Shown piece after piece: positions 31,307-60,001 of a DNA stretch of 64,000 nt. Source of the DNA: Kudoa neothunni (Eukaryota; Animalia; Cnidaria); NCBI GenBank assembly GCA_964304625.1, contig OZ199839.1, positions 6,636,034 through 6,700,033 on the forward strand, given 5' to 3'. The notes beneath the pieces were generated by a model. The model saw only the letters and a list, made by a program, of their open reading frames with translations. It had not been told where the DNA came from and made no database searches. Numbering within the stretch: position 1 is the stretch's first letter; the number at the start of each line of letters is the position of its first letter. Made by a program: the position numbers and the translations under genes.

Positions 31307-32683
31307 ATGCTGTGGTTTTCATTATTTACTATTTTCCTCACTAATGTTACAGCGGGTGATTGATTTAATTCTTTATTTATATTGTTTTATTTTTAAAAAG
31401 AGAGAGCTTTACCTTCTTATGAAAAGGATGTTGGCCAGGCCCCAGCTTGGTTGACGACTGATGCTTTGAAAGCACAGGCTGCTGTAGAAAGATGGTATAT
31501 TGACAAAGATGACGCGACTTGCAAACCCTTTACTTATCTTGGGTCTCTTGGAAATTTCAACAACTTTGTTTCAAGATCTGCTTGCAACGAGCATCGTATA
31601 TCGCGTTAAATTTATTTAAACATTTAATCCTGAAATAGTAAAATTCAAACCTGAAGAACAAGCGGATGCATGTGCATTGCCACAAAGAGATGGGGATTGT
31701 GGCTTAATTGGCGATAAAAGAATAACAAGATGGTACTTCAGCAAGGATGCTGTTAACGGTGTGTCAGGCGCTTGCCACAGCTTTAAATATAATGGATGCG
31801 GTGGAAACGCAAACAACTTTGAATCAGAAAAGGAATGTAAACAAGCTTGCCAAAGTAATTCGCATTAATGCATTCCTTCTTGATTTAATATTAATATAAT
31901 ATTTTTTCACTCATCTTTACAGACAACAAAAATGGTGGAATGGATTCTGGAGCTGCAGAAAATACTATGACCGCTACTCCAAATGAATTTGATTGTAAAT
32001 TTGTACCCGAAGTCAAATCCGCCACACCTGTAATGGGGATTGTTCCCCACAAAGATGGGGAAAAAATGCGTTTACGCTGCTGTTGGAAAAGATGCAACAA
32101 GAGGATTTTTCAAAGAGTTACCAAACTGTGTGAAAACTTGCATAAGTATAATTTTAAACATTATTCAATATCTTATTTATTTCAAACAGAAAAAAAAGTT
32201 CCAGCGTGCAAAGCTAACGGCCCACATCAAGTAGAAAGCGAAACTGATATCACACTAACATCTCAAGTAACTACGTACTACTATTTCAACAAAACCTCAG
32301 CATTATGCTTACCCTTCATGTCAAAAACAGTTGGAACTGATACTCCGAAAATTGACGATGGTGCATTAAACATATTTAGCTCTGTTGAGTTGTGTGCAAG
32401 TTCTGTCCCGCAAGTATGAACATAATTTCGAATAGAATGTAATCATATTAGTGTAGCTGGTCACATTGGTCAACTGACTGCAGTTGAAGCTTGTTTACTG
32501 CCAAAAGCTGGATTGTCAAGTACCACTGATAAATACAAAATTAGTAGGTACTACTACAATCCATCTGCATCCGGTACTAAATGCACAGCATTTAATTTTA
32601 ACGGAAGAGACATGAACCTAAATAATTTCAAAGATTCAACAGATTGCACAAATATTTGTGAAACTCCATTGAGTACATCATAG
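31307..32683 (+). CDS. Secreted five-Kunitz-like-domain protein, paralog 3 (+1 at ~32057-32060, -1 at ~32401)
   Basis: Same 6-exon structure. MLWFSLFTIFLTNVTA; domain 2 ACALPQRDGDCGLIGDKRITRWYF...GCGGNANNF; ends ICETPLSTS*. Indels are GGGG vs GGG and TT vs TTT compared with paralog 4. Confidence 0.8.
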
Positions 32684-32952
32684 TCGTGGAAACGTCTTCG
32701 ATAATATTTTATAGCCCATATTTTAAATTCTCTTACTGAGCTAGTTATTATTATACACTTTAACGAGATTGCGTGAATTTTTACCAACACTGTACTTAAG
32801 ATAACTATATTTATTCAATGTTTCTTTTATAAAAACTACATCCAAACATGATAAAAATATTCGAAACAATTTTGACTGTTGATAAAATGTAATATACTAT
32901 CGAACTCGATTATCCGGAAACTTTGGAACCAGCGATTTTCTTGCCGGATAGC

Positions 32953-33444
32953 TTTTTTTTGTTTAAAAGATCAAACCCCTGGCGCAACTTGTTAGGTTGT
33001 GAAGTTCGACTGGTTAGGCCTTCTCCATTTAGGCTTTGGGCACTGCAGCATCATATTAAGGCGACTTACATATATGCGGTAGTGTGGGATTTTAACCCAT
33101 CAAACATCCTCGTTTCGGAGCAAACCACCATCCCAACCATAACCTAGGACTAACCCAGAATTAGTCTGGAAAAATCGTCTGAATGCGGGCGTCGGCCCTA
33201 CGGAAACCCCCACTGGGCTGTATTTCGTTCTTGTACCCCGGCGTTTATGAGCTCCTGAGGTCTACACTTCCGCCAGGCACCCCTCCAGCTACAAGCAAGG
33301 CCACGATAAATCGTTGATCCTTACAACTACTGCAGCCTTCCTACTTAATTTTGGATTAAAAGTACAGGAACTCCCGGACTAGACATCGAACTCGCAACCT
33401 CATGGTATGCAATCTCGACCCAACACCATTATGTCATATTGTCC
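32953..33444 (-). mobile_element. tRNA-derived SINE, copy B (full length with A-rich tail), inserted in a pogo-type MITE end
   Basis: The reverse strand reads GGACAATATGACATAATGG...GAGTTCGATGTCTAGTCC and ends TTTTAAACAAAAAAAA. The flanks, TCGAACTCGATTATCCGGA and TTCCGGACAGCGAGGTTCG, are MITE TIR-like. Confidence 0.75.
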
Positions 33445-33492
33445 ATGCTTTCTTTCCGGACAGCGAGGTTCGGGTTGATCGAACATAAACAA

Positions 33493-33985
33493 GGCAATGG
33501 CTATTGCTACGAATCCGTATAATCCGCATGTGGGGGGGTGTCGATTGCTACGGGAGGGATTAACTCTTAATCTAAAAACCCGTTTAAAATTTGAGATTCA
33601 AATTTGTAATTAATAGTTTTTGGCCCAACATAATCAACAATTTTAAAGAAAAACACGGCTAAAGTTCCCAACATCCCCAATACTCGGGATTTTCGTTATC
33701 GAGGTCGTACGAGTTCCAGAAAACCACGACTGCTTCGCGCTGTTTATTCAGCTAATAATTTAGATGAACTAAACTTTGAAAAAATAACATATTTCAAAGA
33801 TAGGAAGGATGAACTGTTGAAATTTTTAATTGGAATTGGACTTTTGCCTAGGGTGAGTGTATGCATTTTTGGATGTAGAATGGTTATGGCGATTCGACCA
33901 CGATATCCAGATAGATATAGTTTCAAATGTCATAATCGTTGTTGCCTACATGAACTATCCACCAGATATAATAGTTTCTTTTACC
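33493..33985 (+). mobile_element. Merlin 5' end with zinc-ribbon remnant; inverted terminus copy at ~26905-27025
   Basis: Terminus GGCA.TGGCTATTGCTAC, followed by GLLPRVSVCIFGCRMVMAIRPRYPDRYSFKCHNRCCLHELSTRYNSFF. Confidence 0.65.
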
Positions 33986-33989
33986 ACTA

Positions 33990-35591
33990 AGGCGAAAGTT
34001 GAACGATAATGACTTATGCGCAGATTAAAATAGGGTTTTTATTAAGGAATACATTATTTTATATGAAGATAAACCGCATATTTTCAATAACAAAAATGAC
34101 TATTCTAACTTCCAAGAATAAGTTTTAGATATAGCCTCTAAATAGTGTAGTAGCCGTAATATTTTGTATAATTCTGGCATATCGTTTTGAATTTTTTCTA
34201 AATAAAGAATGTTTTTATTTGAAGATTCAGGGTTATATATCGGATATTCAATATCTTGTTCAACGTGACTTGGAGTTTATTTTAAGTTTCTCAGAAAAAT
34301 TGGCAGACCTCAGTGACTTTGATCGAATCGGGAATAAAAAGGACGATGGAAAAGTTCTGCAGAGATTATTGTAAGATCAATATTATTGGTGGTTCTCTCA
34401 AAATTGTTCCATGTGTCGTGTCTATATTTGGATGTTTTTATAAAAAAATTTTTCTAAATATTCTATAAATGAAGCAATGTTAATATCAGCGAACGAATTT
34501 GACGTATTTTTCAATTTAAGAAATTCATCAGAATACTGGAAATAGGTGTAAACGATAACGAAATAAAACACTTTATATACAACTTAAAATCACTGTTATG
34601 TAGATAAAATGCCGCGAGATCTAGATTTTGTATTTTTCGCCAAATACATTGGCTATAATGAAACATGCAAAAATTTATAATAATATTTTGTGAAACATTC
34701 TTGAAAGCGTTAAAAGCTGACAGTTCTAGATCAATTATTAAATCCTGGGAAACATACGGATAATTTATGGTGCAAAATATTGAAAAAATTTTCGTAAAAT
34801 GATTGAGTTTTCCAAGTCATTAAGACAAATACTGAAGGAAAGAATTTTCTCATTATTCCACCATGGATGATATACAACTGATAGAAAGATTCAGGAACAA
34901 CATTAAACTTACCATCTGTCAACCATACATTTGTATTATTCAGATGTTGAATATTCTTATCGGTCGTAAAAATTATGATTCTATCGTCTGCTAGAGATCC
35001 AGAATAATGAAAGCATAAAAGTTTCGTTTCTTAAGCTAAATAAGTTAGCATTTGCCAAATTGCTGTCGATATTGACATCTATTTTCTTTCTTCTACGAAT
35101 ATTCTGAATATTTTTGTAAATGTTTCTTTTATTAAATATCGATAACTTATTCAGACTAGTCTGAGTCGTACCGATGACATATACCTTACTTGTGGCGTAT
35201 CGTGTATTCTTGGAAACATTGCGAATTTTTTCTTCAAAAATAATTTTGTTTATGTCATCTTCTATAATGACTTGGTTATGGATTCCATGTTCTTCAAGTC
35301 TATCAATCTCGTCAGCCGGAAAAGTCCACACGCGTCCTTCACAACCTCTTTTTTCGCATCTCCATAATTGATGGTCTTTACATTTTTTATCCTGACATAA
35401 AAATATTGTCAGAAAAATATTTTATCGTCTCTGCGTCTTATTTTGAGCATGGTGAATGAGTTTTCATTTCGTTCCATTTTGAGGGTTAAGCAGGCGCAAT
35501 CACATGTGAGCTAAATGCGAATAAAATAATACTTATCGCGCCATCGCCGAAATCGGCAAATGTTCATTGTCGGCGAAAATTCGCCATATCC
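33990..35591 (-). mobile_element. MULE transposon, decayed
   Basis: TDGKFNVVPESFYQLYIIHG and W.CEKRGCEGR...HNQ; terminus GGATATGGCGAATTTTCGCCG. Confidence 0.85.
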
Positions 35592-36254
35592 AGCCTCGAT
35601 TTACGTGTGTTTATATTCTTTAGAATAGATTCTGACTATATTGGAGAAAGGAATTAAAAACAGACTTATAAAAAATCATATTATTATCAGGTGCGGGAAA
35701 ATCAGACGTTGGACTGGAGTCGGATTCCATATCGTATAATCAATATGACGATATTGTATTCGAATTCATTTCTAATGATGAGGAGGAAGGTGACTACCGT
35801 TTAAATTAGAAAGTGAACGCAAAAAATTTAGTAAACAATGATATTGAAACAACTGATATTTTTGAACCTTTCACTTATTTCAACCGATTCTTCAATGATA
35901 GAATATTTGAACAAATTTGCATTAAATGTAATGTCCATGTGTGACTCAATGAAAATAGAAACTGCTTTTTAGACTATCGAAATTGTAATGAATAATTTAA
36001 TATTTAATTTCTGATAGTGGAAGGGTAACTTTTTGGTTAAAAAAAAACATATAAACGAGCATATGTTCACTCCCGCACATTGAAATAATCGCCGTCCAAA
36101 TGTTACCATTTAACACCATGTGTTTCTTTTTAATTTTTGAAATGATTGTTTCAATTTTTGGATGTTTTATATAAAGTTATTTAAAATTAAACATAATGAG
36201 CAAAAAAAAATTTTCTGGCGCTGATTTAAATTCGGGGTTCAAAGAGTTAATCAA

Positions 36255-39180
36255 TGTCTTTACGAAGGACCAGTAAAAATAGAAGACCTATGTGCATTGT
36301 TGATTCGTTTTAGAATTGGAAAGATTGCGCTAATAACAGATATAGAAAAAGCTTACCATCGAATTGCATTGAGGGAAGAAGACAGAGATTATACACGCTT
36401 TCTTCGGTAAAAGAATCCAAATTGTCCACCCACCAATGACAATATCGACATACTTCGATTTTCCCGCGTTCGATTTGGACTAATTTCAGCTCCATTTTTG
36501 TTACAAGAAACATTATTACATCACTTTACTAATCAAAAGGACTTGGAAATATCAAATCTATACCGGTCCATTTATGTCGATGATTTGGTACATAATTGTC
36601 ACAGCTTGGATGAAACACTGAAAATATACCAACAAACTAAATCTACACTCAACGAAGTTTCTTTTAACATATGCAAATGGAGTACCAATTCCAATACATT
36701 GAAAAAGTTTTTACGAGACAAGATGCTGATTTTTCTCATGACGTCAAAGTTCTTGGCATTGTGTGGAACATTGTCAGTGATACGCTCCTAATTAAAAAGT
36801 GGAAGACAACGCAAAGCGATAAAAGGATAACAAAACGAATTGTCGACTCCAATATATTTTGTGTATTCGATCCCCTGGGTTCCTTCTTTCCAATCACTTT
36901 GGAGGTTAAATTGCTGCTAAGAGAAATTTGATGTTTTAAATGCGATTGGGATGATGTGCTACTAAGATACATTAGCAAAAAATGTTTCGATATCGCGAAA
37001 GATTTAAAACAGATGTCAACATGGAGCATAAACAGAACATTCAACAAAGTCAGTTTCCATAAAGAACGTTTCACTTGCATGTTATTTTGCTTCACTGATG
37101 CTTCTCAGCTGGCATATGCTTGTGTCATCTACTTGGTCGTATAAACAGAGTACGAATGAGCCTATGCTCGTTTATTCAAAGAGTGGAGTCGCTCCGATAA
37201 AACACATGACGATTCCGAAATTAGAACTAATGGGAGCCCTGCTTGGAGCAAGTGCTACAAAATCTGTTGAAAAATCTATGGAAATTAACATATCGGAGTA
37301 ACACATATTTTGTGACTCTAAGCGTGTTTTACAGTGGATTAAATCTGAAAAACCACTACCGACAGTTGTCATAGGTAGAATTGTTGAAGTGCAAAACTTT
37401 GATAATGTTACGTGGAATTTTATTCGATCCGAAATAAATCCTGTTGATAAAACAACTCGAGGAATAAATCTATCCGATAAAACCAGTATGGAATTATGGT
37501 TCTCTGGCCTTGAATTTATTTTACATGAACGAAATAAATGGCCAACTCATTCGATATACAATACACAAATTGTCATACCTAATAACAGGGTTATCCTAAC
37601 CCAACAAAGTCGCACAGTTGAAGAAACTCAAAACAAAGAAATTTTCAGTTTTGGTTTAGACCCAACTCGATTACCCAAATTTTACACATTAGGGAGATCA
37701 ATGGCCTGGATTATACGTTTCATTTCCCATTGTATGAGGAGATATAAACAGTCAACAAAATAATCTAGTTTAGAAATTGACGCTGCCAAAAAACTAATTA
37801 TTAAGGAAGTGCAAGAATGACATTTATCAGAAAAATTTAATGCGCTAAGAATGAAAAAGTACGATAAACAAAGGGTTCAGTTTGGGATATGCATAGATGA
37901 AAATGGATATTTACGGTTTGACTGTCGTTTAAACAACATGGAATCTTCATAAAATTCTAAACACCCGTATTTACTGCCCAAATCAAGTTGTGATACTCGC
38001 CTAATTATTTTGGATGTGCCCGAAATTGGCGGTCATTGTGGTACCAATTCGACATTAAGCCGGCTTATGAAAAATTACTGGACACCACACATACGTTCCG
38101 TAGTTCGTTCAAATATCCAGCGTCGTTACCACTGAAAAAAATTCAATCATCCACCTTACCAATTACCTCAATTTCCAAACTTCCCCGATTTCAGAGTCAA
38201 TAAATACACGCCATTCTCACACATTCGAGTAGACTACGCCGGTCCATTCAAAATATTCAACGAAGAAGCTGAAAATAAAGTGTGGATATGTCTCTTTACG
38301 TGCGGTACAATCCGTGCAGTACATCTGGAACTCATAGAATCACTATCTGGTGTAGAGTTTCTTAAATGCTTCAAAAGATTTACGAGTCGAATAGGATGTC
38401 CCACATTGATAAAATCTCACAATGCCAAATTTCAGATCTTTTTCAAAGTCAATATTAAATCTATCGAGAAACAGCGAGCTACAACCATCAATTCTTCATT
38501 CGTATTGTGAGAAAAGAAATATTTCATGGAAATTTATCACTGAGTTTGCACCTTGGATGGGAGGTTTTTACGAAAGAATGATTCAGTTGGTGCAAAGGTT
38601 CGTTCAAAAAACTCTTGGTTCAAGAAAATATTCATTTAATCGATTCAACACATTTCTCACTGAAATAAAATTCATGATCAACTCTAGACCATTAACCTAT
38701 ATAACAAGCGAAGAAATCACAAAGATTATTTTCCCAAATGATTTCTTATGTTTAAACAAACAATACGCTTCTTGCAATGAAGTTGAAGAGTCCAACATCG
38801 ACGTTAATTATGAAGTGAATGGGATGAACCCCAGTAAAACTAATATTGAATTATGGAGAATGGGAAAGCGAATTCTTGAAAACTGTTGGAAACTCTGGGA
38901 AAATCAATGTCTTGAATCTCCGACAACGTTATCAAATGGATTATCCTCAAGCCAAATTAAAAAGAAACTCAATACCTTAAAATGACGATGTTATTCATGT
39001 GATGGAACCTACCAAGCTAAACAGTTGGATGTTCGGAAAAATTGTCGAAATATACGAAAATTCTGAAAGTAATGTGACATCCTCGAAAGTAAAGCTTGCA
39101 GACGGAAAATGTGTGAGAAGATCCATAAAACATCTTAGTTTTTTTGAACTTCTCCCTCGGGAGCGTTGTTGACTGCTAGT
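36255..39180 (+). mobile_element. BEL/Pao LTR retrotransposon pol remnant (RT, RNase H, integrase)
   Basis: DIEKAYHRI, YVDD, FDPLG, FTDASQLAYACVIY, TIPKLELMGA, VDYAGPF, APWMGGFYERMI and INSRPLTY; many stops and frameshifts. Confidence 0.92.
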
Positions 39181-41360: not shown

Positions 41361-42751
41361 ATGTTGGTGCTTTCACTATTTTCTTTTTTCTTAGCAATTG
41401 TTACTGCGGGTGATTGATTTAATTCTTTATTTATATTGTTTTATTTTTTAAAAAGAGAGAGCTTTACCTTCCTATGAAAAAGATGCTGGTCAGCCACCAG
41501 TTTGGTTGACGGATAAAAGCCAACAAGAACAGGCTGCTGTCGAGAGATGGTATATTGACAAAGAGGATGCCACTTGCAAACCTTTTACTTATCTTGGATC
41601 CCTCGGAAACTTCAACAACTTTGTCTCTAGAGCTGCGTGCAACGAGCATCGTACATCTCGTTAAATTTACTTAGGCGTTTAATACTGAAATAGTAAAATT
41701 CAAACCTGAAGAACAAGCTGATGCATGTAAGTTACCGAAAACAGATGGAGGTTGTAGCTTAACAGGTGATAAAATGTTAACAAGATGGTACTTCAACAGA
41801 GATACCGCTAATGGCAATATAAACACTTGTCTCAGCTTCAAATACAATGGATGTGGTGGAAACGCGAACAACTTCGAATCAGAAAAGGAATGTAAACAAG
41901 CTTGCCAAAGTAATTCTCTCCTTAGTTTATAGAATATCTAAAATTAAATACTATACATATATTATGCTTAATTTGTATTTATGCTAACAGATAACAAAAA
42001 CGGTGGAATGGATTCTGGAGCTGCAGAAAATACTATGACCGCTACTCCAAATGAATTTGATTGTAAATTTGTACCCGAAGTCAAATCTGCCACACCTGTA
42101 ATGGGAATTGTTCCCCACAAAGATGGGAAAAAATGCGTTTACGCTTCTGTTGGAAAAGATGCAACAAGAGGATTTTTCAAAGAGTTACCAAACTGTGTGA
42201 AAACTTGCATAAGTATAATTTTAAACATTATTCAATATCTTATTTATTTCAAACAGAAAAAAAAGTTCCAGCGTGCAAAGCTGATGGCCCGCATCAAGTG
42301 GAACCCACGGCTGATATCACAACTATGACAGGTGTATCTACGTATTATTACTTCAATAAAACGTTAGCATTGTGCTTACCTTTCATGTCAAAAACGGCTG
42401 AATCCCCAACCACAAATATTGATGATGGTACATTGAACATATTTAGCTCTGTTGAGTTGTGTGCAAGTTTCTGTCCTGCAAGTACCAAATATACTGATAA
42501 TAATATTTAATATAAATTAAGCTGCTCATATTGGTCAATTAACCGCGGTTGAAGCTTGTTTTCTGCCAAAAGCTGGAGAGTTAAGTGGCACCGGTAAGTA
42601 TCAGATTCAGAGATTCTATTATGATCACTCTGCAAGTGGCGACAAATGTACACAATTCAAATTTAACGGGAAAGATATGAACCTGAATAATTTCAAAGAT
42701 AAAGCTGATTGTGACAAAATTTGCAAGGATCCTCTAACAACAACCGTCTAA
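41361..42751 (+). CDS. Secreted five-Kunitz-like-domain protein, paralog 4 (intact)
   Basis: The spliced frame is open from MLVLSLFSFFLAIVTA to ICKDPLTTTV*, with five phase-1 GT-AG introns at conserved positions. Confidence 0.9.
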
Positions 42752-42995
42752 TCAAATCATCGAATTCTATATTATTATAATTTAATATATTTATAAACCT
42801 TAGAATACTTATTATATTATATCCTCAAAAGTATGAAACGTTTCGACTAATGTATTGAATATACATTAGGTAACCGGTTTCACGTTCTTCTTCGACGACC
42901 GGGGAAAAGGTTCTTAAAACTTGCCACGCCCGATTCTGCACACTTTAATGTGCACTCATTACACGAGGAATTTACTTTTTATTACTACCTATTAA

Positions 42996-47967: not shown

Positions 47968-48276
47968 TTTGAATATTCCTATTTATACCGAAACGGTCCC
48001 GTATTGTGTAGTTTGGCCATTATTGTCGTGTTATTGAGAATGTGGGTTTTTTAATATATAATAACGTATTCCTCAACAAAAACAGTTTTTTATCTGCGTA
48101 TGCGTCATTCTAGGCGAACTTTCACCCTAGGAGTTACAAACTACCATATAATTTTAATATTTGATGCAAATTAGAATCATTACTAGTTTAATTAGAAAAT
48201 ACATTTAGAACTAGTTTTCATCCATTATCAAAATGACAGATATCGAAAGAATAAAACATCTATTAAAGCTTTAAAC

Positions 48277-48994: not shown

Positions 48995-48999
48995 GTATA

Positions 49000-50621
49000 T
49001 ATAAAGGAGGACTGTCGCGTGTGAGTTTTACATAGAAAAGTGCGAATATATAGTGTTTATATTTTTAAAATCTATTCTATTCAAAGTTCCAGTTATATAA
49101 TTTATTAATTTCTCTTAAATAGAACAAATCGTAATAAGACGGATAATTATCGCACATAGCTTTGGTTGAATCCATTTTTTCTTGCTGTTTCATAGGTTGG
49201 TTATTATTATTTGGATTTGTTAACTGAAACTCGATATCTTGCCCAATTGAACTTTGCGCTTGCTTTAATTTGTCTATCAAACAATCAAGCCCAGCGTGTG
49301 ACTGATCAAAGCGGTCGAAGAAATGTCGATTGAAGCTTTCACAACTATTTGTTGTCAATGGAATATTTTTCATCACTCGTTCAAACGAGTTCCAAAAAGT
49401 AGTAGGAAATTTTGAATTTTCTATATATGTTTCGGTGGAATATTTAAAAAATATTCCAATTTTTTCATTATTGAAATTGTTTGAATATTTTTTCAATTTT
49501 TCAAATTCTTTTTGGACGAAATTAGGAGGCAGAAATGATAACGATGTGACCATTTTGAATACGCATCGAAGCTCAATGTTCTTTTGTGCATCTTGTAATA
49601 AACCTATTTTTTGAATTTCCCTCCAAACTGCTTTCCCAAAATGGAAGGTACAAAATTGGATATTTATTGTTTTTGATGCTTTTTCAAAATCAATTATTAA
49701 ATTATCAGGTAATTTAATATGTGGGGTTTCTTTCATTATGTTGATCATAAGGTTATAATCCTCCTCAGTTTTTCCAGGCATTAAAATAAATACTAATGGA
49801 AATACCCTGTTAAAAATTATACCATGGATAACATAGAGTTGATAGAACCCTTTGGGTACAACCTTAAACGTTCCATCGGAGAGCCAAATATTTGAATTGT
49901 TTAAGTGACTCATATTTTCCTCTGTAGAAAATATTATCATTCTTTTTGTGCAGAGGGATCCATTATCGTAAAAACAGAATTTTTTCCCTCTTAATGTAAA
50001 TATTCCCTTGTTTAACAAGTTGGTCTCATTTACAATCGAGATGCTCATCCTTTTTCTCGTGCTTTGGATCAGTTTATAGACCGTTTTTTGTTAAATATTG
50101 GGAGTTCCTCTATTGGTTTTCTGTTGGTGCATTGGTTGTAAACATTGTTCGTAGAATATATCGTTTCTTCAGCAACAGTCCTTACTTCATTATTTAATAA
50201 CACTTTTTTATGTGATTTTCATCAACAGCGTGATTATGCTCGTCAACGGTCACAATTCTACAAATATCCGGCAACAACGAAGTTTGCAACTTACCGCGAC
50301 ATTTTCTTTGCTGGCACCTCCAAAAATTGTGTATCATCATTTGATGTTGTTGTGACGTAAAAATGTTGCTTATAAAGTATTTTGTAGGTATTTCGTATAG
50401 TTTTCAAAAGTATAAACTCCGCCATTATATCTTTGGTTACTAATTGCGCATGTGGCGTTTCGTGGAGTTACAACCAAAAATAATACTTAAAAAGTAAAAT
50501 AATTATTTGATAAAAGTGCAATTAAACCAAATGAAAACCCCAATCTTACAAAAATGCTTAAAAAACGAGTGAAATAACAATGTGTCGCGCATGCGCACCT
50601 CTGGCGAAAACTCGACATGCC
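49000..50621 (-). mobile_element. MULE transposon with a 323-aa transposase ORF fragment (49077-50048)
   Basis: WLSDGTFKVVPKGFYQLYVIHG, IIDFEKA, CTFHFGKAVWR and TTNSCESFNRHF. Same family as the 22-24 kb and 34-35.6 kb copies. Confidence 0.9.
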
Positions 50622-50625
50622 ATTT

Positions 50626-50627
<2 letters not shown>

Positions 50628-50660
<33 letters not shown>
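50628..50660. repeat. (TA)n microsatellite (also ~1214-1236 and ~60236-60262)
   Basis: Direct (TA)n runs, each about 250-330 nt upstream of the ATG of Kunitz paralogs 5, 1 and 6. Confidence 0.9.
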
Positions 50661-50666
<6 letters not shown>

Positions 50667-50964
50667 AGAAAGAGAGTTGCTCGATGAATTAAAATAGAAT
50701 TCTGATTTATATAAGTCAATTCTTTTATTTTTCTATATTTCTAATATTATTTTATTTGCTTACCTAAAATCTTTAGTAAACATTCCTAACAAGTAAAATA
50801 ATTTTGCTTTGTATGAGTCGGATTTATCGGCCAACATTAATAACCATTCATACGTGTAGGTGAATCAATTAGATTAATAAACTATGGATCAATTAATATA
50901 TCTTGACGACGACAATTCATATTTAATATTATTTATAAACGACTTTTATACATTACTGTGAATT

Positions 50965-52355
50965 ATGTTGATTCTTGTATTATTTTCTCTCTTCTTAGCA
51001 ATTATATCAGCTGGTGACCGATTTAATTCGTTATTCATATTTATATATTTTGTAAAGAGAGAGCTTTACCTTCCTATGACAAAGATGTAGGTCAGCCACC
51101 AGCTTGGTTAGAGAATGATACGCTCAAACAACAGGCTGCTGTAGAAAGATGGTATATTGACAAAGCTGACGCAACTTGCAAACCTTTTACTTATCTTGGA
51201 TCTCTTGGAAATTTCAACAACTTTGTTTCAAGATCTGCGTGCAACGAGCATCGTATATTGGGTTTAATTTATTCAGGCCTTTAACACTGAAATAGTAAAA
51301 TTCAAACCTGAAGAACAAGTCGGTGCATGTGGGTTAGAGAAAGCAGATGGAGATTGTAGCTTAACAGGAAATAATATGTTAACAAGATGGTACTTCAAAA
51401 AGGAAGCTGTTGACAGTAAGACGAACTCTTGCCACAGTTTCCAATACAACGGATGTGGTGGAAACGCAAACAATTTTAAATCAGAGAAGGAATGCAAACA
51501 AGCTTGTCAAAGTGATTCTCTCATTGCTACACAGAATGCTCAAAATAGAATATTGAACAAACAATACAATTAATTTATATTTATTCTACTAGATAACATA
51601 AATGGTGGAATGGACCCAGGAGCAGATGCCAGCACGATGACAGCTACTCCAAATGATTTCGATTGCAAATTTGTACCCGAAGTAAAAACTGCCGAACCTA
51701 AAATGGGAATTATTCCCCACAAAGACGGAAACAAATGCGTTTATGCTGCTGTTGGAAAGGAAATCAAGAGAGGATTTTTCACAGATTTACCAAACTGCGT
51801 CAAAACTTGCATAAGTACACAATTCAAAATTGTTAATAAACTATTAATCTCGAGTAGAAAATAAAGTTCCAGCTTGCAATGCTGAGGGTCCATATCAAAC
51901 TCCATCAGAAACTGATGTTACAACTGGTGTTAGTGAATACTTCTATTTCAACAAAACCTTAGCATTGTGTTTACCCTTTATGTCGAATACCCCAACTGGG
52001 ACGAATAAGATTGACGATGGTACATTAAACATATTTAGCTCCGTTGAACTCTGTGCAAGTTTCTGTCCCGCAAGTATAGACGTAACTTCGAATAAAGTGT
52101 AATAATATAAATTAAGCCGCTCATATTGGTCAATTGACTGCAGTTGAAGCTTGTTTACTACCAAAAGTCGGAGAAACAAGTGGAAATGATAAATACAAAA
52201 TTCCTAGATTTTATTATGACAAGGATGAATCGAACGCTAACACCGCCAAATGCAAGCAATTTAATTTTAACGGAAGAGATATGAACCTGAATAATTTCAA
52301 AGATTCCGTAGATTGCAAAGCTATATGCGAAACTCCATTTTCAAATGCATCTTAA
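50965..52355 (+). CDS. Secreted five-Kunitz-like-domain protein, paralog 5 (intact, 378 aa)
   Basis: Introns of 44, 43, 81, 43 and 43 nt leave 1137 nt (379 codons including stop), from MLILVLFSLFLAIISA to ICETPFSNAS*. Confidence 0.9.
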
Positions 52356-52917
52356 TTTTCAAGAATATATTTTAGTTATTAAACGTTTTCAAAATTTAAT
52401 TTATTTATAAGCGAAATAATATTTTAGTATTGTATCATTGGTATATGAATAGATATTGTATGCACAACTACTGAATATTTCATTATTATATATTGATATC
52501 ATAATTATGAATAATCACATTATCAGGAAGAATATGATATCATTTTACCATAGCTAATCTTAAAATAAACGATGATTATTTATTGAGGTTTTCGAGCTTT
52601 AACAACACTGTGCCGTGCTTTAACCCAATGGTGGGCACAACTTTTGGATCTGCGGGCCACATTGGCTCGTTACAGAAGCTTGGAGGGCCGTATTGTTGAT
52701 TAAGTGTTTTCTGAGAACTTAAATACCACCTATTGATGGTTTTTCTAATATTTTTGGTACAATAAAAAGCTAGTGTATAAATTAATTTAAAAAGGAACTA
52801 AATAATTTTGAAAAAATAGAAATTTGGTGATCGACATACTATTGCAAGTTATAATCGAGATAATAGGTTTTATAGTTAATAAATTTTAATTATAACTAAA
52901 GTTATGAAAAGTTAATA

Positions 52918-54957
52918 CAGTAGGTAACCCGTTTCACGCACGTTTAATTTCACGCGCTTTTTAAAAGCTACTTATTTTTACTAAGAGATGAAATATTGAT
53001 TCAATAATAATTTTTTATAAACAATTTTATCAATTTTTCTTGAAAAATAAAGTTATAAAATATCGTACACAAATATCACGTGATTGACTGGTTCACGCAC
53101 TTTTTTTAGCTGAGTTTGTTGACAACTTTTTTGTTTTTTATTTTAATGGCCAGAAGAGCACTGAAAATTCGAATTTTAACAGAAACATATAATAAAATTA
53201 AATATTATGATAATTTATCCCAAAAATGCGAAAGCCGGTACCACCTAACATTTTAAATTATCCTCAATTACGACTCTCAAAGGAATTTTCAAAGTGAGGA
53301 AAAAACATTGTGAAAATTTATGAAGGATTTCTACTTTCTAAAAATAGAAAATATTTGAATAATGGGTTAAATAATGATATCGATCAATAGGTGTACGAAT
53401 GGATGTCACACAAGAAACAAAAAGATTGAATTAAGCGCCGAGAATATCATAGATAGAAGAAATGAGTTTGCTAATCGTAAAAATTTGCTATCAACTGCAA
53501 TGAATGTATGGTTTCGTTGCTTTAAAAAAAGATATAATATTTACAAAATTAATTATCACGGCGAATCTGGCGATGTTGATCCCAAAACTACAGCAGAATG
53601 GATGTGTAAAATTGGAGCGTTTTATGATGGGTATTCGGAGGATTGCATTCACAACAATGATGAGACGGGTTTGCTATATCAACAACAGCGTGGTAAATAT
53701 TTCTCAATTTATTTTGTAAGGGTTTTTAAGGTAACAGTTGTGTCCATTCATCCGAGAACAATATGAGGGGGACTACAAAATCAAAAAAAAAGCGTTTGAC
53801 TGTTTTATTGGGAGCTTCGTTAAGTGGAGAAATGTTAGATCCCTTGTTAATCGGACCGATTAAAAAATCACGTTGTTTCAAGAATATTAAAAAGTTACCG
53901 CTTTTATTCGAATCAAACAAAAAGGATTGGATGACTCAGGATTTTTTCTTGAGGTACATTTCGAAAATTAATGACGGCTTTATTAAACAAGAGAAAAAGG
54001 TTTTACTATTTTTAGACAACGCGACCTCCCATTTTCAAAATGATTTTTCTAACATAAAATTAATATTTTCCCCCAAAACGCCATTAGTGTTTTGCAGTCG
54101 CTAGATCAGGTCGTCATCCATTCCCTTAAATCGTGCTACGAAAAGTCGATGATAGAATGATCCATTTATTGTGTTGAAATGGGAATAGAGCTAAGTCCTT
54201 CAAATGTTTTAGAAGCAATGGGATTAATTAAAACTGCCTAGGAGAGTGTTTCTAAAAATACAATCACAAATAGTTTCATAAAAGCAGGATTTTCCCCGTT
54301 AAGATTTATCTCAATTCAAGATAATTTATTAGCTGAAAATGGTGAAAAAGTTGCTGATGATTTGATCGCGAATGAAATAACTGAAATGATAAAGGGAGAG
54401 GAATCATACGTAGCTCTTAAATATAATGATTTTGATTTTTCCGGCAAATAATGATCAAATACTAAACACGAGTGAGATATTTGGTAGTTTCATTTTATTT
54501 ATATTTTTTAAGATTGTAACGCTGATGATGCAGAACAATGTGACACAGATGGGACACACGATGTGAAAGAACTCACCAGCAACAAAATTATTACCTGCAA
54601 AAAGGCTTTGAAATATTTGAAGGAATTAAAATCATTTTTAGGTGCATGATAATAATCAAAATATTAATTTGAATGCAGCAGAAGAATCGATATTTAAGAT
54701 TCTCTCAAACAATATGAAACAAACTAAAATTACAATATATTTTGTTCGGACATAATTTATTTTATTTTTCGTTTAATCATATTATATTTATCCGACATTA
54801 TTGAATAATAAAAAATTTTTTGAATGAATAGACAGGAATAAAAAATAAATTCCCCCTAGTGCACGTGCGCATTGAAAATATGTAGAACCGGGTGTGAACA
54901 ATTTCACGCACTTTTTTCCTGGTCCCGGAAGAAGTGCGTGAAACTGGTTACCAACTG
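52918..54957 (+). mobile_element. pogo/Tigger (CENP-B-like) transposon, full length, decayed
   Basis: TIRs CAGTAGGTAACCCGTTTCACGCAC / GTGCGTGAAACTGGTTACCAACTG with TA flanks. Motifs WFRCFKKR, HGESGDV, NNDETGL, KKRLTVLL and LFLDNATSH. Confidence 0.9.
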
Positions 54958-55074
54958 TATTACTCATTATGTACACATGAAATATTTAATAAATGACTCC
55001 GATACAATTATTTTAAGCATACAATTCCATACAATATCTGCTATAAAATGAGACCTAAATTATAAATTTGAATA

Positions 55075-56067
55075 CAGTAAGAAACCAAATTTACTTAATC
55101 TCCTGAGGACTAAGCAAAAAAGTGCGTAAAACCGGTCATGTACAATTTCACATACTTGCATGCGCAATCGTTCAGAAAAAATTGGCATTTAATAATGATT
55201 AAATTGCGTTTATAAAGGCTAGTTAAATATATATTAAATTTTAAACGATAATTGAAACTCGAGAAACGTATTAGCAACACAAAAATATTTTTCAACGATC
55301 TATAAAATACTCTTCTTGTTGCTATCAATAGAATAAGACAGTTTCGTCTACATTGTAAATAAAATTTTCAGAGTATCATTTAAAAAATGTTCTGATTTGA
55401 TCGGTCTACTATTAAGTAGTTTCAAATGTAGCATCAAAAGATTAGCTAATAAAATTTGATTTATTAATGTTGGACCTTTTTTAAAACAACGAAACCCTCC
55501 ACGAATCGCACACGAAGGTAAATCTTTTTCTTTGGCTAACTGATTTCTTTTGATGATTATTGTGACGATGCTTGCTAAAATTTTTTTGCTTCGTATCCAC
55601 TCATATACATCTCCATCAACAGAATTAAATTGTCCTGCTTGCAAATAATTTTTATTTTTAGATTTTACAAACATTTATAGGTTTTGATTATTTTATTTTT
55701 CATCTCTAGGATGCCATTAGGAGACGAGATAATAAATATTTAAAAATGCGATACATTGGCAGTTTTTAGGTCATTAAATTGAAGAATTTCGTAATAATTA
55801 GTAATATTGTACTCTTAACAATAGATATAGCATAGGAGCTTTTTGGCATTAAAAATTGACTTAATTAAATAAGAAACAAGAAGTACCCGAAAAAAGTGAG
55901 TGAAATTGGTCAATCATGTGATTTTTAGTTACGTTATTTAGCATCTTTTTAAAATAATTTTTTCAAAATTTTGATTGAGATATAAGAAAAATATTATATA
56001 AACAATAACCAATCAATATTTTAATTAAATAGATTTTTAAAACGTGCGCGAAATTTGTTACTTACTG
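55075..56067 (-). mobile_element. Internally deleted pogo/Tigger element
   Basis: TA-CAGTAAG...CTTACTG-TA termini; HTH CENP-B-like fragment VDGDVYEWI...GFRCFKK. Confidence 0.7.
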
Positions 56068-56169
56068 TATAATCAAACTAATAAAAACTAATTAGATTTA
56101 TAATATTTCAGATTACATTAAATTTTTTGTGACAAATATAATCAACTTCCAGAAATAATTCTTTTTAAA

Positions 56170-56990
56170 TTTATTACGGAATATTACAATCCCAAATTAT
56201 GATTAAAATAACAAGGAATTAAAAAAAATTTTACTTGTTGGTAAGTGTCAATGTAACATTCATCTTTTAAGGTTTTGTATATGTTTTTAGAATAATAATT
56301 CCACCAGGTAGAGTTATCATAACTTATTATTTCTATTAATTCCCTATCCTTGAGCGTTCCCGCCCAAAATGTCGATGATGGTATTAGACTGTTATCAAGT
56401 ACATCTATTAAGTTTATATCCAAGGAACAATCAGTAGGGATGTCAATAGAAGCTTTTAATGGCGCTCTGGACAATGTATCCGCGTTTAGGTTATCATTAC
56501 CCTTGCCATAGACGAGAGGCTAATTGAAACCAGCCATATAAAGTGGCCATCGGGCCATTCTTTGTGATGTTACGTGTGAGAATTCTTTAATTTTATCCAG
56601 TAATGTAGTCAGTGGTTTGTGATCAGTGAATATCGTAAATTTTCGACCGTCCAACATCTGTTTAAATTTTATTATTGCCTTAAATACTGCTAAGGCTTGA
56701 TTATCGATAACACAGTAGTTTTTCTCTGCATCACCATAGGTTTTTGGCGTGAAAGCTATTGGCCTTTCAACGCCATCAATAATTTATGAGAGAACCCCAC
56801 AGGTTCCCACATCAGAAGCATCCGTGGCTAGTACAATTGGGTTTTGTGGGTCGTAATGGTTGAGTACTCGGTTTCTAGATATGAGATTTTTGGCTTTAAC
56901 AAAGACTTTGTGTTGATTTTTTGTCCATTTTCATTTACAATCCTTTCGCAATAGCGAATTTAGAGGTTCAATAACTTCAAACATATGTGA
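56170..56990 (-). mobile_element. Ty3/Gypsy pol fragment (RNase H)
   Basis: IVLATDASDVG, RPIAF, FTIFTDHKPL, RMARW and ADTLSR on the reverse strand. Confidence 0.85.
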
Positions 56991-56999
56991 AAATTGTAG

Positions 57000-58221
57000 T
57001 TCAGATTGTATACATAATATCGACGAATCTGCATTATTCTACCAGCAGCAGAGAGGTATACGTAGTTTGTTAAAGTTTTGATTTATTTTGTAAGTAAAAG
57101 CTTTGTAGTTCCACCAGAGAAAAATATAAAGGGGACAAAACAATCTATGAAGCGAGTAACTATTTTGTTAGGTGCCTCAATGAATGATGAAAAGCTTGAA
57201 CCGCTAATAAGCGACAAACTCAAAAACCCTTGTTGTTTTAAGGATATTAAAAAATTTCCTGCCATATGAAAACAATAATAAATGTTGGATGAATAGTGAT
57301 TTACTCTTGAGATATATAACCAAGCTTAATCACTTACTTGAAAAAAGGAATAAACATGTGTTTTGTTTCTTGATAATGCATCCTGCCATTGTAAAAATAA
57401 ATTTGAGAAATATAAAAATGGTTTTTCTCCCCCAAAAAACTACGAATGTTTTACAACCTCTTGATCAGGGGATAATATATTCATTTAAATCTGCCTACAA
57501 AAGAGTTACGATTAAGCGATACATTGCTCGTGTTAAAACAGGTATTGATCCCGTCCCTCCGAACATACTAGAGGCAATGTTTCTTATAGAAGATTCTTGG
57601 GATACGGTTGATCCAGAAACAAATTATAAATTGTTTTAAAAAAAGCGTATTTTCCTATTGATGAATTTTCATCTATACCACTAAGCGATAATTAAAATAA
57701 TAGATGTATCTAATAGAGAAAGCAGTGATACCATATGCCCAGAGAAAATTAATGACAAAATAAACGAAATGATTCAGGAGGAGGATGATCTTTGCTGCTT
57801 ATATGATGACTATTCCACATTATATTTAGATATTAGGAATAATTTGGTGGATTGTGTTAAGTATGGCGAAGGATCTGGTGAGGAAGTGCTTGAAGATAAA
57901 TCTGAGGATACCCCTGTTCCGAATTTCAAAGAGGCTATTGATTCCATCAGCGAACTTAAAAAATTCTTTCTGAAAAATGATGTTGATCGACTCAGAAATC
58001 TTTCAAATCGTGAGAACGACGTATACGATATCATGTGGAAAAATATTAAACAATCGAAAATAACAGATTTTTTCAAACGTTAGAATATAAATATTGTTTA
58101 GTCTACTATATTGCATCTCATCTTTATTCAAACATGTTTTCTCGTTGATTAAGAGTTATAAATGTAATATTTAAATGACGATTGCACACTTAACAACGTG
58201 TATAAAATCGGTTGCCTACTG
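57000..58221 (+). mobile_element. pogo/Tigger 3' half
   Basis: NIDESAL, KRVTILLGAS, VFLP..TT.VLQPLDQGII and KQSKITDFF; right TIR ...GGTTGCCTACTG. A similar 3' remnant ends at ~40018. Confidence 0.8.
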
Positions 58222-58601
58222 CATATCAATTAAACGAGTAATATTATCAGATAAATTTACGCTTTGAACACCACTTTATAATATTTTTTTAAGCTTGCAC
58301 ATTTTCTAACATCTACCTGCTCAAGTAATAATTAATTACATTCAATGAAATTAGGAATAACATTAAATGATCCGTTTGGGTGGATAATAATTTTTTTTCG
58401 TGCAGGATAAATCCTGATTCATCCTCATTTTATATAGTATAGCTATATTTTTTCTATGAAAAGCTACTATATTTAACGCATTAATTAATTCTACGTATAT
58501 TTATAAGGACATTAAACCTCAAAATTAATGTCATAAAATAACTAGCATACTAAGGTCCATAAATATGTCAATCTATATTAATATGAAAATAGATGATTTG
58601 A

Positions 58602-60001
58602 CTAGGAGGTTGCCAGAGGTTCAATGCAAATTTTGTTACAATCTTCTTTAGATTTGAAATTATTCAGGTTCATGTCTTTTCCGTTAAAATTAAATGACTT
58701 GCATTTTTCAGTGCCAGCGTTCGATTCATCTTTGTCATAATAAAATCTAGTAATTTTGTATTTATCATTTCCACTTGTTTCTCCGACTTTTGGTAGTAAA
58801 CAAGCTTCAACTGCAGTCAATTGACCAATATGAGCAGCTTAATTTATATTATTACACTTTATACGAAATTACTTTCATACTTGCGGGACAAAAACTTGCA
58901 CATAACTCAACAGAGCTAAATATATTCAATGTACCATCGTCAATTTTTGGATCACCAGTTACAACTGTTTTTGACATGAAGGGTAAGCATAATGCTAACG
59001 TTTTGTTGAAATAATAGTATGTAGATACAGTGGATGCATCTGTGGTGTCACCACTGGTGGTGATTTCAACTTGATATGGACCCTCAGCATTACAGGCTGC
59101 AACTTTATTTTCTATTTTAGATATATAATTTATTTACTACAATGAGTTTTATACTTATGCAAGCCTTGACGCAGTTTGGTAAATCACCGAAAAATCCTCT
59201 TGTGGCAGTCTTTCCAACAGCAGCATAAACGCATCTATTTCCATCTTTGTGGGGAACAATTCCCATTTTGGGTTCGGCAGTTTTTACCTCGGGTACAAAT
59301 TTGCAATCGAATTCATTTGGAGTCGCTGTCAATTTTGTAGGGTCTTCCACACCCGTTACCCCACCGTTCCCCTTATCTATAAACATAATTACAAAATAAT
59401 TTTTATCATTTTGATTGATTTTAAACTCTGCATTAAAAAATGAGAGAATTACTTTGGCAAGCTTGTTTACATTCTTTCTCTGTTGCAAAGTTGTTTGCAT
59501 TTCCACCACATCCGTTGTATTTGAATTTGTGACATGAAGCTTGTTTGCCTTCGACAGTATCCTTGTTGAAGTACCATCTTGTTAACATTTTATCGCCTGT
59601 TAAGCTACAATTTCCGTCTGCTTTCTCTAACCCACATGCACCAGCTTGTTCTTCAGGTTTGAATTTTACTATTTCAGTATTAAACGTTTAAACAAAGTAA
59701 ACGAAATATACGATGCTCATTGCAAGCAGATCTTGATACAAAGTTGTTGAAGTTTCCAAGAGATCCAAGATAAGTAAAAGGTTTGCAAGTGGCATCCTCT
59801 TTGTCAATATACCATCTCTCGACAGCAGCCTGTGCTTTTAAAGCATCAGTGGCCAACCAAGCTGGTGGCTGACCTGCATCTTTGTCATAGGAAGGTAAAG
59901 CTCTCTCTTTTTAAAAAATAAAACAATATAAATAAAGAATTAAATCATTCACCCGCAATAACAACTGCTAAGCAGAGAGAAAATAATGAAAGCACCAACA
60001 T
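58602..60001 (-). CDS. Secreted five-Kunitz-like-domain protein, paralog 6 (intact, inverted orientation)
   Basis: The reverse-strand spliced frame is open from MLVLSLFSLCLAVVIA to ICIEPLATS*, with the same intron positions and phases. Confidence 0.9.

What the first reader, a model, noticed from the sequence alone, without database searches (positions are those of the whole stretch)
31307..60001. Paralogs are patchwork mosaics: block-wise gene conversion or exon shuffling that includes introns
Seen: the closest partner switches along the gene. Intron 1 is near-identical in paralogs 3, 4 and 6 (GTGA.TGATTTAATTCTTTATTTATATTGTTTTATTTTT(T)AAAAAG) and is a different type in 2 and 5 (GTGACCGATTTAATTC...TTTTGTAAAG). 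Exon 4 plus intron 4 are almost identical in 3 and 4 (~31921-32205 vs ~41990-42280). The start of exon 3 (GACGLEKADG) and intron 5 with the first half of exon 6 (LLPKVGETSGNDKYKI...DKDESNA) are shared by 5 and 6. The 81-nt intron 3 and the D4 loop type group 1 with 5; WYFNKDTVEGK groups 1 with 6. The 3' end and UTR group 1, 4 and 6 (PL..S/TV* then TCAAATCATC) against 2 and 3 (ETPL..S* then TC..GGAAAC.TCTTC). Shared intronic blocks cannot come from protein-level convergence. The spacers between genes are not colinear and paralog 6 is inverted. Inference: recurrent ectopic conversion recombines loop cassettes, analogous to VSG or vlsE mosaic formation.
Basis: partly seen in the sequence, partly recalled or inferred. 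Interest (0 to 1): 0.85.

Follow-up and report, generated by a model that had tools for sequence, protein, structure and literature searches.

The report
Recombining Kunitz gene array in Kudoa
Six neighbouring genes for a secreted multi-Kunitz protein in a fish-parasite genome (most likely Kudoa neothunni) really are patchworks of each other, made by ordinary recombination between gene copies; nothing points to a programmed antigen-switching system.

Summary
The window carries six paralogs: p1 1525-2907, p2 14837-16228, p3 31307-32683, p4 41361-42751, p5 50965-52355 and p6 60001-58602 (inverted). Each has a signal-peptide exon and five domain exons joined by phase-1 introns. The nearest partner switches block by block, introns and flanks included. 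No single tree fits: PHI z is -12 to -18, and AU tests reject every other block's tree. Discrete young tracts exist, such as p3=p4 over 281 nt at 98.6% against 74% outside, and p5=p6 over 147 nt in an inverted pair.

A new result: an uncollapsed second haplotype 88 kb upstream carries one intact hybrid gene, p1 5' part joined to p2 3' part. The switch lies inside 23 identical bases, and the 11.8 kb between p1 and p2 is missing. This is an unequal-crossover allele in the same sample.

The mechanism is ectopic gene conversion plus unequal crossing-over in a tandem family of at least 35 copies. It is not exon shuffling, because tract ends lie mostly in exons. It is not VSG/vlsE-like, because every copy is a complete gene with its own conserved upstream region.

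The frame breaks in p1-p3 are probably low-coverage consensus errors. Other first-stage notes flagged the same mosaicism elsewhere in this genome.

The parts
1525..2907 (+). Paralog p1: signal-peptide exon and five domain exons. The frame is disrupted in exon 3 in this assembly.
   Evidence: the allele L011 lacks the disruption
14837..16228 (+). Paralog p2. The frame is disrupted in exons 5 and 6 in this assembly.
31307..32683 (+). Paralog p3. The frame is disrupted in exons 4 and 5 in this assembly.
   Evidence: short-read contigs over 32057-32061 disagree with the assembly by one base
41361..42751 (+). Paralog p4, intact. Exons 2, 3 and 6 are Pfam Kunitz_BPTI, exon 5 is borderline, and exon 4 is unassigned.
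50965..52355 (+). Paralog p5, intact.
58602..60001 (-). Paralog p6, intact and inverted. Its 5' 889 nt are 97.8% identical to the next copy, L004, which lies beyond the window end.
31934..32215 (+). Conversion tract in p3: exon 4, intron 4 and the start of exon 5. It is shared with p4.
   Evidence: 281 nt at 98.6% against 74% outside; the p3+p4 clade has 100% support in this block only
42002..42282 (+). The same tract in p4.
   Evidence: an independent 484-nt short-read contig runs from p4-type intron 3 into the shared block (record 27)
52092..52238 (+). Conversion tract in p5: intron 5 to mid exon 6. It is shared with the inverted p6.
   Evidence: 147 nt at 98% against 77% outside
58716..58862 (-). 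The same tract in p6.
31356..31400 (+). Intron 1 of the type shared by p3, p4 (41410-41455) and p6 (59907-59952).
   Evidence: 98-100% identity; split clustering p<0.0005
2592..2614 (+). The 23-nt identity block in exon 5 of p1 within which the hybrid allele L011 switches from p1 to p2.
15906..15928 (+). The matching 23-nt block in exon 5 of p2.
2873..2958 (+). 3' end and flank of the type shared by p1, p4 (42714-42802) and p6 (58551-58636). p2 (16194-16280) and p3 (32649-32735) share a second type.

Best explanation
The six genes belong to a large tandem family of complete genes for a secreted protein. Each protein has a signal peptide and five small cysteine-containing domains, one per exon, and at least three of the domains are Kunitz/BPTI.

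The mosaic pattern is produced by homologous (ectopic) recombination between copies. Short non-reciprocal gene conversion tracts of about 100-1000 nt are copied between nearby paralogs in either orientation. Occasional unequal crossovers fuse two neighbouring copies into one hybrid and delete what lies between them.

Conserved scaffold-coding stretches, intron ends and the short conserved flanks supply the homology. The hypervariable loop-coding stretches between them are carried along as passengers. Events of different ages overlap, so each gene has a different nearest relative in each block.

Shown here: the tracts, the incompatible trees, the decline of tract sharing with distance, and the hybrid allele. 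Inferred: that repair of DNA breaks using a paralog as template is the molecular route, and that selection on binding loops keeps the shuffled variants.
For: - Single-tree rejection. PHI z=-12 to -14 for six copies. For 22 non-allelic copies z=-17.6, or -14.9 with exons only. In AU tests each of six gene blocks rejects every other block's ML tree and the whole-gene tree, all p<0.01.
- Conflicting clades, each with high bootstrap support. p3+p4 has 100% support in the block of exon 4 plus intron 4, while p3+L004 has 100% in the exon-6 block. p6+L004 has 94-100% in all five other blocks.
- Discrete young tracts flanked on both sides by about 75% identity, spanning introns. One is in an inverted pair, p5-p6. 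A simple crossover cannot give that pattern.
- Distance effect. All pairs with a near-perfect tract of score 100 or more lie within 300 kb on the same contig. That is 8 of 25 pairs under 30 kb apart, 3 of 83 at 30-300 kb, and 0 of 123 further away or on other contigs.
- Direct crossover product. L011 is 99.8% p1 up to exon 5 and 99.8% p2 from there on. It shows one switch, inside 23 identical bases. All its exons are open, and 11.8 kb is absent.
- L011 is most likely an allele. Its block ends exactly at scaffold gaps, so it looks like the other haplotype of the same locus.
- Assembly context. The window is one gap-free contig. The assembly fits a hifiasm-meta HiFi assembly with no short-read polishing described.
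Against: - No long read was available. Only short contigs from one sample could be laid, and none spans a paralog.
- Which copy was donor, and whether an exchange was reciprocal, cannot be read from one genome.
- Long 5' or 3' shared blocks (p6-L004, L016-L017) could come from recent duplication followed by replacement of the other end, rather than from conversion of the shared end.
- Whether the 88-kb-apart blocks are alleles or a true duplication is inferred from gap positions only.
Confidence: 0.85

Rival explanations
1. Assembly artefact: the shared blocks were created by consensus, polishing or collapse between paralogs.
For: Per-haplotype coverage is low according to the paper that fits this assembly. 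Uncollapsed haplotigs and many 1-nt indel differences between them show that the consensus is imperfect.
Against: Paralogs are only 72-80% identical outside the tracts, so long accurate reads or 150-nt reads would not mis-map between them. No short-read polishing is described. All six genes sit in one contig. An independent short-read contig confirms p4 across the left tract boundary. The same pattern recurs in 22 copies on three contigs. The consensus errors seen are indels, not substitution blocks.
Confidence: 0.04
2. A programmed antigenic-variation system like VSG or vlsE, in which silent cassettes are copied into an expressed copy during infection.
For: The family is large, encodes secreted proteins and belongs to a parasite. 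Loops are hypervariable and exchange is segmental. Several copies are frame-disrupted and could be read as a silent archive.
Against: Every copy has the conserved upstream region, TATA-like box, start codon, signal exon and stop. No expression site or truncated cassettes are present in the window. The C-terminal ends show no hydrophobic anchor. The frame breaks are absent from near-identical alleles and look like consensus errors. Tracts show a range of ages, as expected from evolutionary turnover.
Confidence: 0.04
3. Exon shuffling: whole domain exons were exchanged by illegitimate recombination in introns.
For: All introns are phase 1 and each exon encodes one domain, which is the classical shuffling-competent layout.
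Against: Tract ends fall inside exons in about 12 of 17 cases. The p3-p4 tract starts 11 nt into exon 4 and ends 25 nt into exon 5. The hybrid junction lies in exon 5. Exchange is always between equivalent positions, so it is homologous.
Confidence: 0.03
4. A single history with uneven rates or convergence, so that shared blocks reflect constraint rather than exchange.
For: Scaffold parts are under purifying selection (dN/dS 0.16-0.26), which raises identity locally.
Against: Constraint cannot make introns and 3' flanks 98-100% identical in some pairs only. It also cannot give well-supported conflicting clades.
Confidence: 0.01

Closest known systems
Interlocus gene conversion and unequal crossing-over in tandem multigene families (reviewed in PMC3966226, seen; otherwise my own knowledge)
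   Same: Paralogs in arrays. Short non-reciprocal tracts that include non-coding DNA. Block-wise conflicting trees. More exchange between close neighbours. Conserved parts homogenised while variable parts persist.
   Different: Nothing in kind. The family and the organism appear not to have been described in this respect: the paper that fits the assembly mentions no Kunitz family.
Lepore-type hybrid genes from unequal crossover between neighbouring paralogs (my own knowledge)
   Same: L011 is the 5' part of one copy fused in frame to the 3' part of the next, with the DNA between them lost.
   Different: Here the parents are only about 72% identical and the switch lies in a 23-nt identity block. 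The product is found as a probable second haplotype in one parasite sample.
Ectopic recombination among Plasmodium var genes (my own knowledge)
   Same: Complete genes, each with its own promoter, exchange segments and give in-frame chimeras. This enlarges a repertoire of exported parasite proteins.
   Different: No evidence here for mitotic events within an infection, for mutually exclusive expression or for surface exposure.
VSG mosaic formation in Trypanosoma brucei and vlsE segmental conversion in Borrelia (my own knowledge)
   Same: Segmental copying between related sequences yields patchwork genes.
   Different: Those systems copy from silent, often incomplete cassettes into one expression site during infection. 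This array has no such architecture.
Myxozoan Kunitz toxin-like proteins (PMC9144971)
   Same: Kunitz proteins are a core retained family in nearly all myxozoans, and multi-domain forms are common.
   Different: That study reports mostly three Kunitz domains, from transcriptomes. Here there are five domain exons, at least 35 genomic copies in arrays, and recombination between them.

Membership tests
Ectopic gene conversion / unequal crossing-over in a tandem gene family | Significant phylogenetic incongruence along the aligned paralogs | tested here: met
   PHI z=-12 to -18. AU tests reject all cross-block trees. Viterbi segmentation finds 4-5 breakpoints against at most 2-3 in the null.
Ectopic gene conversion / unequal crossing-over in a tandem gene family | Discrete high-identity tracts flanked on both sides by diverged sequence, including non-coding DNA | tested here: met
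   p3-p4: 281 nt at 98.6% against 74%. p5-p6: 147 nt at 98% against 77%. Both include an intron.
Ectopic gene conversion / unequal crossing-over in a tandem gene family | Exchange more frequent between physically close copies | tested here: met
   Tracts of score 100 or more occur in 8/25 pairs under 30 kb apart, 3/83 at 30-300 kb and 0/123 beyond. This is partly confounded with recent duplication.
Ectopic gene conversion / unequal crossing-over in a tandem gene family | Hybrid gene with loss of the intervening DNA (crossover product) | tested here: met
   L011 = p1 5' part + p2 3' part. 11.8 kb is absent and there is one switch within 23 identical bases.
Ectopic gene conversion / unequal crossing-over in a tandem gene family | Non-reciprocity and donor/recipient direction | not testable with these tools
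   Needs outgroup arrays or pedigrees.
Programmed antigenic variation by segmental conversion (VSG, vlsE) | One expression site plus silent, promoterless or truncated donor cassettes | tested here: not met
   All 24 close copies have the conserved upstream region, start codon, signal exon, five domain exons and stop. No gene fragments of this family lie in the spacers.
Programmed antigenic variation by segmental conversion (VSG, vlsE) | New mosaics arising within one infection | tested here: inconclusive
   Only short contigs of one sample could be laid. Some match neither the assembled p3 nor p4 exactly, but they may be alleles or graph chimeras.
Programmed antigenic variation by segmental conversion (VSG, vlsE) | Product is a surface-anchored antigen | tested here: not met
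   Exon-6 translations end without a hydrophobic tail. This rests on sequence only.
Exon shuffling | Symmetric same-phase exons, one domain each | tested here: met
   All five introns are phase 1 and each exon holds one domain.
Exon shuffling | Exchange boundaries in introns | tested here: not met
   About 12 of 17 ends of the clear tracts lie in exons.
Kunitz/BPTI domain (PF00014) | Pfam score above the gathering threshold, tested exon by exon | tested here: met
   Exon 2: 43.1 bits. Exon 3: 56.4 bits. Exon 6: 44.8 bits. The cut-off is 21. hhalign between these three gives 89-98% probability.
Kunitz/BPTI domain (PF00014) | The same test for exons 4 and 5 | tested here: inconclusive
   Exon 5 scores 19.9 bits, just under the cut-off. 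Exon 4 has no hit in Pfam, no PDB profile match and no hhalign relation. The AlphaFold model has pLDDT 46.

The most novel reading that the evidence does not exclude
The array works as a diversity generator in the manner of the Plasmodium var repertoire. Ectopic recombination between complete secreted multi-Kunitz genes happens often enough, possibly during clonal growth in the fish, to keep producing new in-frame chimeras with reshuffled hypervariable binding loops. Selection by host proteases or immunity maintains these. The intact hybrid allele found in the same sample would be one such product.
Probability: 0.12. Interest if true: 0.7.

Novelty: new member of a known kind. Interest (0 to 1): 0.4.

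Why it matters
It shows that the largest secreted-protein family visible in this myxozoan genome evolves by active recombination. The evidence includes a hybrid allele still segregating in one sample. That is relevant to how a much-reduced parasite diversifies proteins that probably meet host proteases.

There are two practical consequences:
- Trees or orthology calls made on whole genes of this family will mislead. They should be made block by block.
- Part of this region of the assembly is an uncollapsed second haplotype, and single-base frame breaks here should not be read as pseudogenes.

Tried and rejected
- **Nematode origin.** Searches of the genome for the SL1 RNA family and for the cuticle-collagen N domain found nothing, and their controls did not ring either. 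I dropped the idea once the assembly statistics fitted a Kudoa paper.
- **Small contig C4.** ARAGORN found no credible tRNA set.
- **Sequencing runs.** They gave only short contigs of one sample. No piece spans a paralog and contigs of different paralogs co-map. They could not settle either the frame breaks or the junctions.
- **Exon-4 domain.** AlphaFold gave pLDDT 46, too low for a fold search, so none was run. A PDB profile search found nothing meaningful.
- **Literature.** Searches for a described Kunitz array or gene conversion in myxozoans found none.
- **Positive selection.** Whole-exon dN/dS is 0.16-0.26. Only a few loop windows reach pN about equal to pS. This is not proof of positive selection.
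- **Spliced model.** All protein searches were exon by exon, by reference.
- **Broken copies.** The frame-disrupted copies were left as they are.
Full report
**What is in the window.** A blastn of one copy against the window finds six full-length paralogs at 75-82% identity. They are p1 1525-2907, p2 14837-16228, p3 31307-32683, p4 41361-42751, p5 50965-52355 and p6 60001-58602 on the minus strand. A MAFFT alignment of the genomic copies gives one gene model for all. It has a 49-nt exon for a hydrophobic signal peptide, then five exons of 195-245 nt. The introns are 40-81 nt, GT-AG, and all phase 1. Scanned exon by exon by reference, exons 2, 3 and 6 are Pfam Kunitz_BPTI (43-56 bits, cut-off 21). 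Exon 5 is just under the cut-off at 19.9 bits, and exon 4 has no hit. Profile-profile comparison agrees: exons 2, 3 and 6 are related, exon 5 only weakly, exon 4 not detectably. An AlphaFold model of exon 4 was too poor to use, with pLDDT 46.

**Frame breaks.** p4, p5 and p6 are open throughout. p1 (exon 3), p2 (exons 5 and 6) and p3 (exons 4 and 5) have single-base frame disruptions in short homopolymer runs. I left them as they are.

**Which organism.** The genome has 40,260,978 bases in four contigs. The window's contig is 12,040,071 bases and the fourth contig is 18,219 bases. Window GC is about 0.31. PMC12239612 describes Kudoa neothunni assembled from low-coverage HiFi reads of an infected yellowfin tuna. 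It reports a span of 40.2 Mb, a scaffold N50 of 12.0 Mb, three chromosome scaffolds plus a circular mitochondrial contig, genomic GC of 30.41%, introns of 49 bp, a hifiasm-meta assembly scaffolded with Hi-C, and leftover haplotypic duplication that was purged. The fit is close, so I take the window to be from that assembly. This is an inference from statistics, not a sequence identification. That paper does not mention Kunitz genes. A transcriptome study lists Kunitz as a core retained toxin-like family of myxozoans, mostly with three domains (PMC9144971).

**Check of the observation.**
- Intron 1 is 98-100% identical in p3, p4 and p6 and of another type in p1, p2 and p5.
- p3 and p4 are 98-100% identical from 11 nt into exon 4, through intron 4, to 25 nt into exon 5. 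Elsewhere they are 55-84% identical.
- p5 and p6 are 99% identical from intron 5 to the middle of exon 6.
- The last 90 columns group p1, p4 and p6 (78-81%) against p2 and p3 (71%), with 53% or less across the two groups.

Small corrections: p4 also has the 81-nt intron 3, and the p1-p6 peptide match in exon 3 is not significant by itself.

**Is it more than chance.**
- For the six copies, PHI on 325 informative sites gives z=-12 to -14, and none of 5000 permutations reaches the observed value.
- The longest runs of agreeing polymorphic sites are 52 for p3-p4 and 37 for p5-p6. The maximum over all pairs in 5000 site shuffles is 28. p1-p4 and p1-p6 in the 5' flank and exon 1 are also significant globally.
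- Site likelihoods under all 105 topologies, segmented with a switching penalty, give 4-5 breakpoints against at most 2-3 in column-shuffled data.
- Sites supporting 125|346, 14, 146 and 23 are each tightly clustered, p≤0.006.

**The wider family.** The genome holds at least 35 full-length copies, mostly in arrays on the same contig. I aligned the 24 copies closest to p4; seven of them have frame disruptions.
- ML trees for six gene blocks conflict with strong support. p3+p4 has 100% in the block of exon 4 plus intron 4, while p3+L004 has 100% in exon 6. p6+L004 has 94-100% in all five other blocks. p1+L011 has 100% in the first five blocks, but L011+p2 has 100% in the last.
- In AU tests every block rejects the tree of every other block and the whole-gene tree, all p<0.01.
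- PHI on 22 non-allelic copies gives z=-17.6, and z=-14.9 with exons only, so intron alignment is not the cause.
- Near-perfect tracts range from about 100 to about 1000 nt, for example L016-L017 (1026 nt) and p6-L004 (889 nt).
- Tracts of score 100 or more occur in 8 of 25 pairs under 30 kb apart, 3 of 83 pairs at 30-300 kb, and none of 123 pairs further away or on other contigs.
- Older, decayed patches link copies on different contigs.

**A hybrid allele.** L011 lies 88 kb upstream of p1. It matches p1 with 3 differences in 1217 nt, from the 5' flank into exon 5. It then matches p2 with 1 difference in 404 nt to the 3' flank. The switch is single and lies inside 23 identical bases in exon 5, at p1 2592-2614 and p2 15906-15928. 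All exons of L011 are open.

The surrounding block C2:6526348-6565109 matches C2:6614127-6666227 at 99.4% up to the switch and 96.8% after it. It lacks the 11.8 kb between p1 and p2. The first block ends exactly at a 200-N scaffold gap, and the second starts exactly after one. That is the signature of two contig ends that overlap but were not merged.

The simplest reading is that L011 and L018 are the other haplotype of p1/p2 and L015. One haplotype then carries an unequal-crossover deletion with an intact chimeric gene. If the blocks were instead a true duplication, the hybrid would still be a crossover product. The reverse history would have to invent two family-type gene halves.

**Mechanism.**
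- Patches flanked on both sides by diverged sequence (p3-p4, p5-p6) are best explained by gene conversion. For the inverted pair p5-p6, a single crossover would invert the DNA between the copies and give chimeras running to the gene ends. That is not what is seen.
- The hybrid allele shows that crossovers occur as well.
- About 12 of 17 ends of the clear tracts lie in exons. This is homologous exchange, not exon shuffling, although the phase-1, one-domain-per-exon layout probably reflects ancient exon duplication.
- Conserved scaffold-coding stretches alternate with hypervariable stretches, whose mean pairwise identity falls to 0.46-0.65. That is below the introns at 0.65-0.77.
- Whole-exon dN/dS is 0.16-0.26, with pN about equal to pS in a few loop windows.

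I infer that the conserved stretches anchor recombination and the loops travel as passengers. Whether selection favours the new combinations is not shown.

**Why not an artefact.**
- The window is one gap-free contig.
- The paralogs are too diverged outside the tracts for reads to mis-map between them.
- No short-read polishing is described.
- A 484-nt contig from independent short reads follows p4 from its own 81-nt intron 3 into the shared block (record 27).

The reads available were only short contigs of one sample, so junctions in p3 and the frame breaks could not be settled. Every contig over 32057-32061 differs from the assembled p3 by one base, but those contigs may come from p4.

**The frame breaks.** The breaks in exon 3 of p1 and exon 6 of p2 are missing from the near-identical allele L011. 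L015 and L018 differ mostly by small indels. The two haplotype blocks differ by 82 gap openings against 67 substitutions in 24.8 kb. With a few reads per haplotype, this looks like uncorrected read error. Other first-stage notes report similar single-base breaks in unrelated intact genes of this genome. I put about 0.7 on consensus error, so the broken copies should not be read as a silent archive.

**Comparison with known systems.** It works like classical interlocus gene conversion and unequal crossing-over in tandem families (review PMC3966226). The hybrid is of the Lepore type. The nearest parasite analogue is ectopic recombination among complete var genes. It is not a member of the VSG/vlsE kind. 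The defining architecture, one expression site fed by silent cassettes, was tested and not met. The products show no membrane anchor.

**Verdict.** It is a new member of a known kind. Interest is moderate: a well-known process, but shown clearly, with a segregating hybrid allele, in a family and a phylum where I found it undescribed. The scan's first readers flagged the same mosaicism in several other windows of this genome.

Noticed in passing
G000 C2:6526348-6565109 versus C2:6614127-6666227 (the latter reaches window 1-30194); also C2:6501001-6507740 versus 6508174-6514914: Near-identical blocks (99.4% then 96.8%; the second pair 99.96%) end exactly at 200-N scaffold gaps. They look like uncollapsed haplotigs or unmerged contig overlaps, so copy counts in this region are inflated.
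   Followed up: partly
window p1 exon 3, p2 exons 5 and 6, p3 exons 4 and 5; also L004, L005, L015, L018: Single-base frame disruptions occur in short homopolymers. Two of them are absent from a near-identical allele. Indels outnumber substitutions between the haplotype blocks. These are probably low-coverage HiFi consensus errors and not pseudogenes.
   Followed up: partly
window 19742-20862: A further, much more distant Kunitz-containing gene lies here (tblastn 31-50% identity to exons 2, 3 and 6 of p4).
   Followed up: no
window 49080-50048 (-), 53763-54101 (+), 57289-57636 (+): Transposase remnants sit in the spacers: a MULE domain and two DDE_1 (pogo-like) pieces. The two DDE regions are about 65% identical to each other.
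   Followed up: no
window 33035-33449 and 28141-28554 (inverted, 82%): A relatively GC-rich repeat lies just downstream of p3. Summed short-read contig depth jumps to several hundred from about 32943, so it is a high-copy element.
   Followed up: no
all six paralogs, exons versus introns: Synonymous divergence in the exons (dS 0.54-0.96) exceeds intron divergence (JC 0.32-0.47). This may reflect saturation in very AT-rich introns, alignment bias, or stronger homogenisation of introns. It is unexplained.
   Followed up: no
window 41993-42211 (exon 4 of p4) and its equivalents: The third domain has four conserved cysteines. It shows no detectable sequence relation to the Kunitz domains beside it, and its fold could not be predicted with confidence.
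   Followed up: partly
window 31951-32236: One 303-nt short-read contig carries p4-type letters at its right end. It has too few differences from the assembled p3 to be the assembled p4. It could be an allele with a different tract end, or a de Bruijn-graph chimera.
   Followed up: no
G000 C4 (18,219 bases; L031, L032): This mitochondrial-like contig has 44% GC against about 30% for the nuclear genome. It has very divergent open frames and no credible tRNA set.
   Followed up: partly
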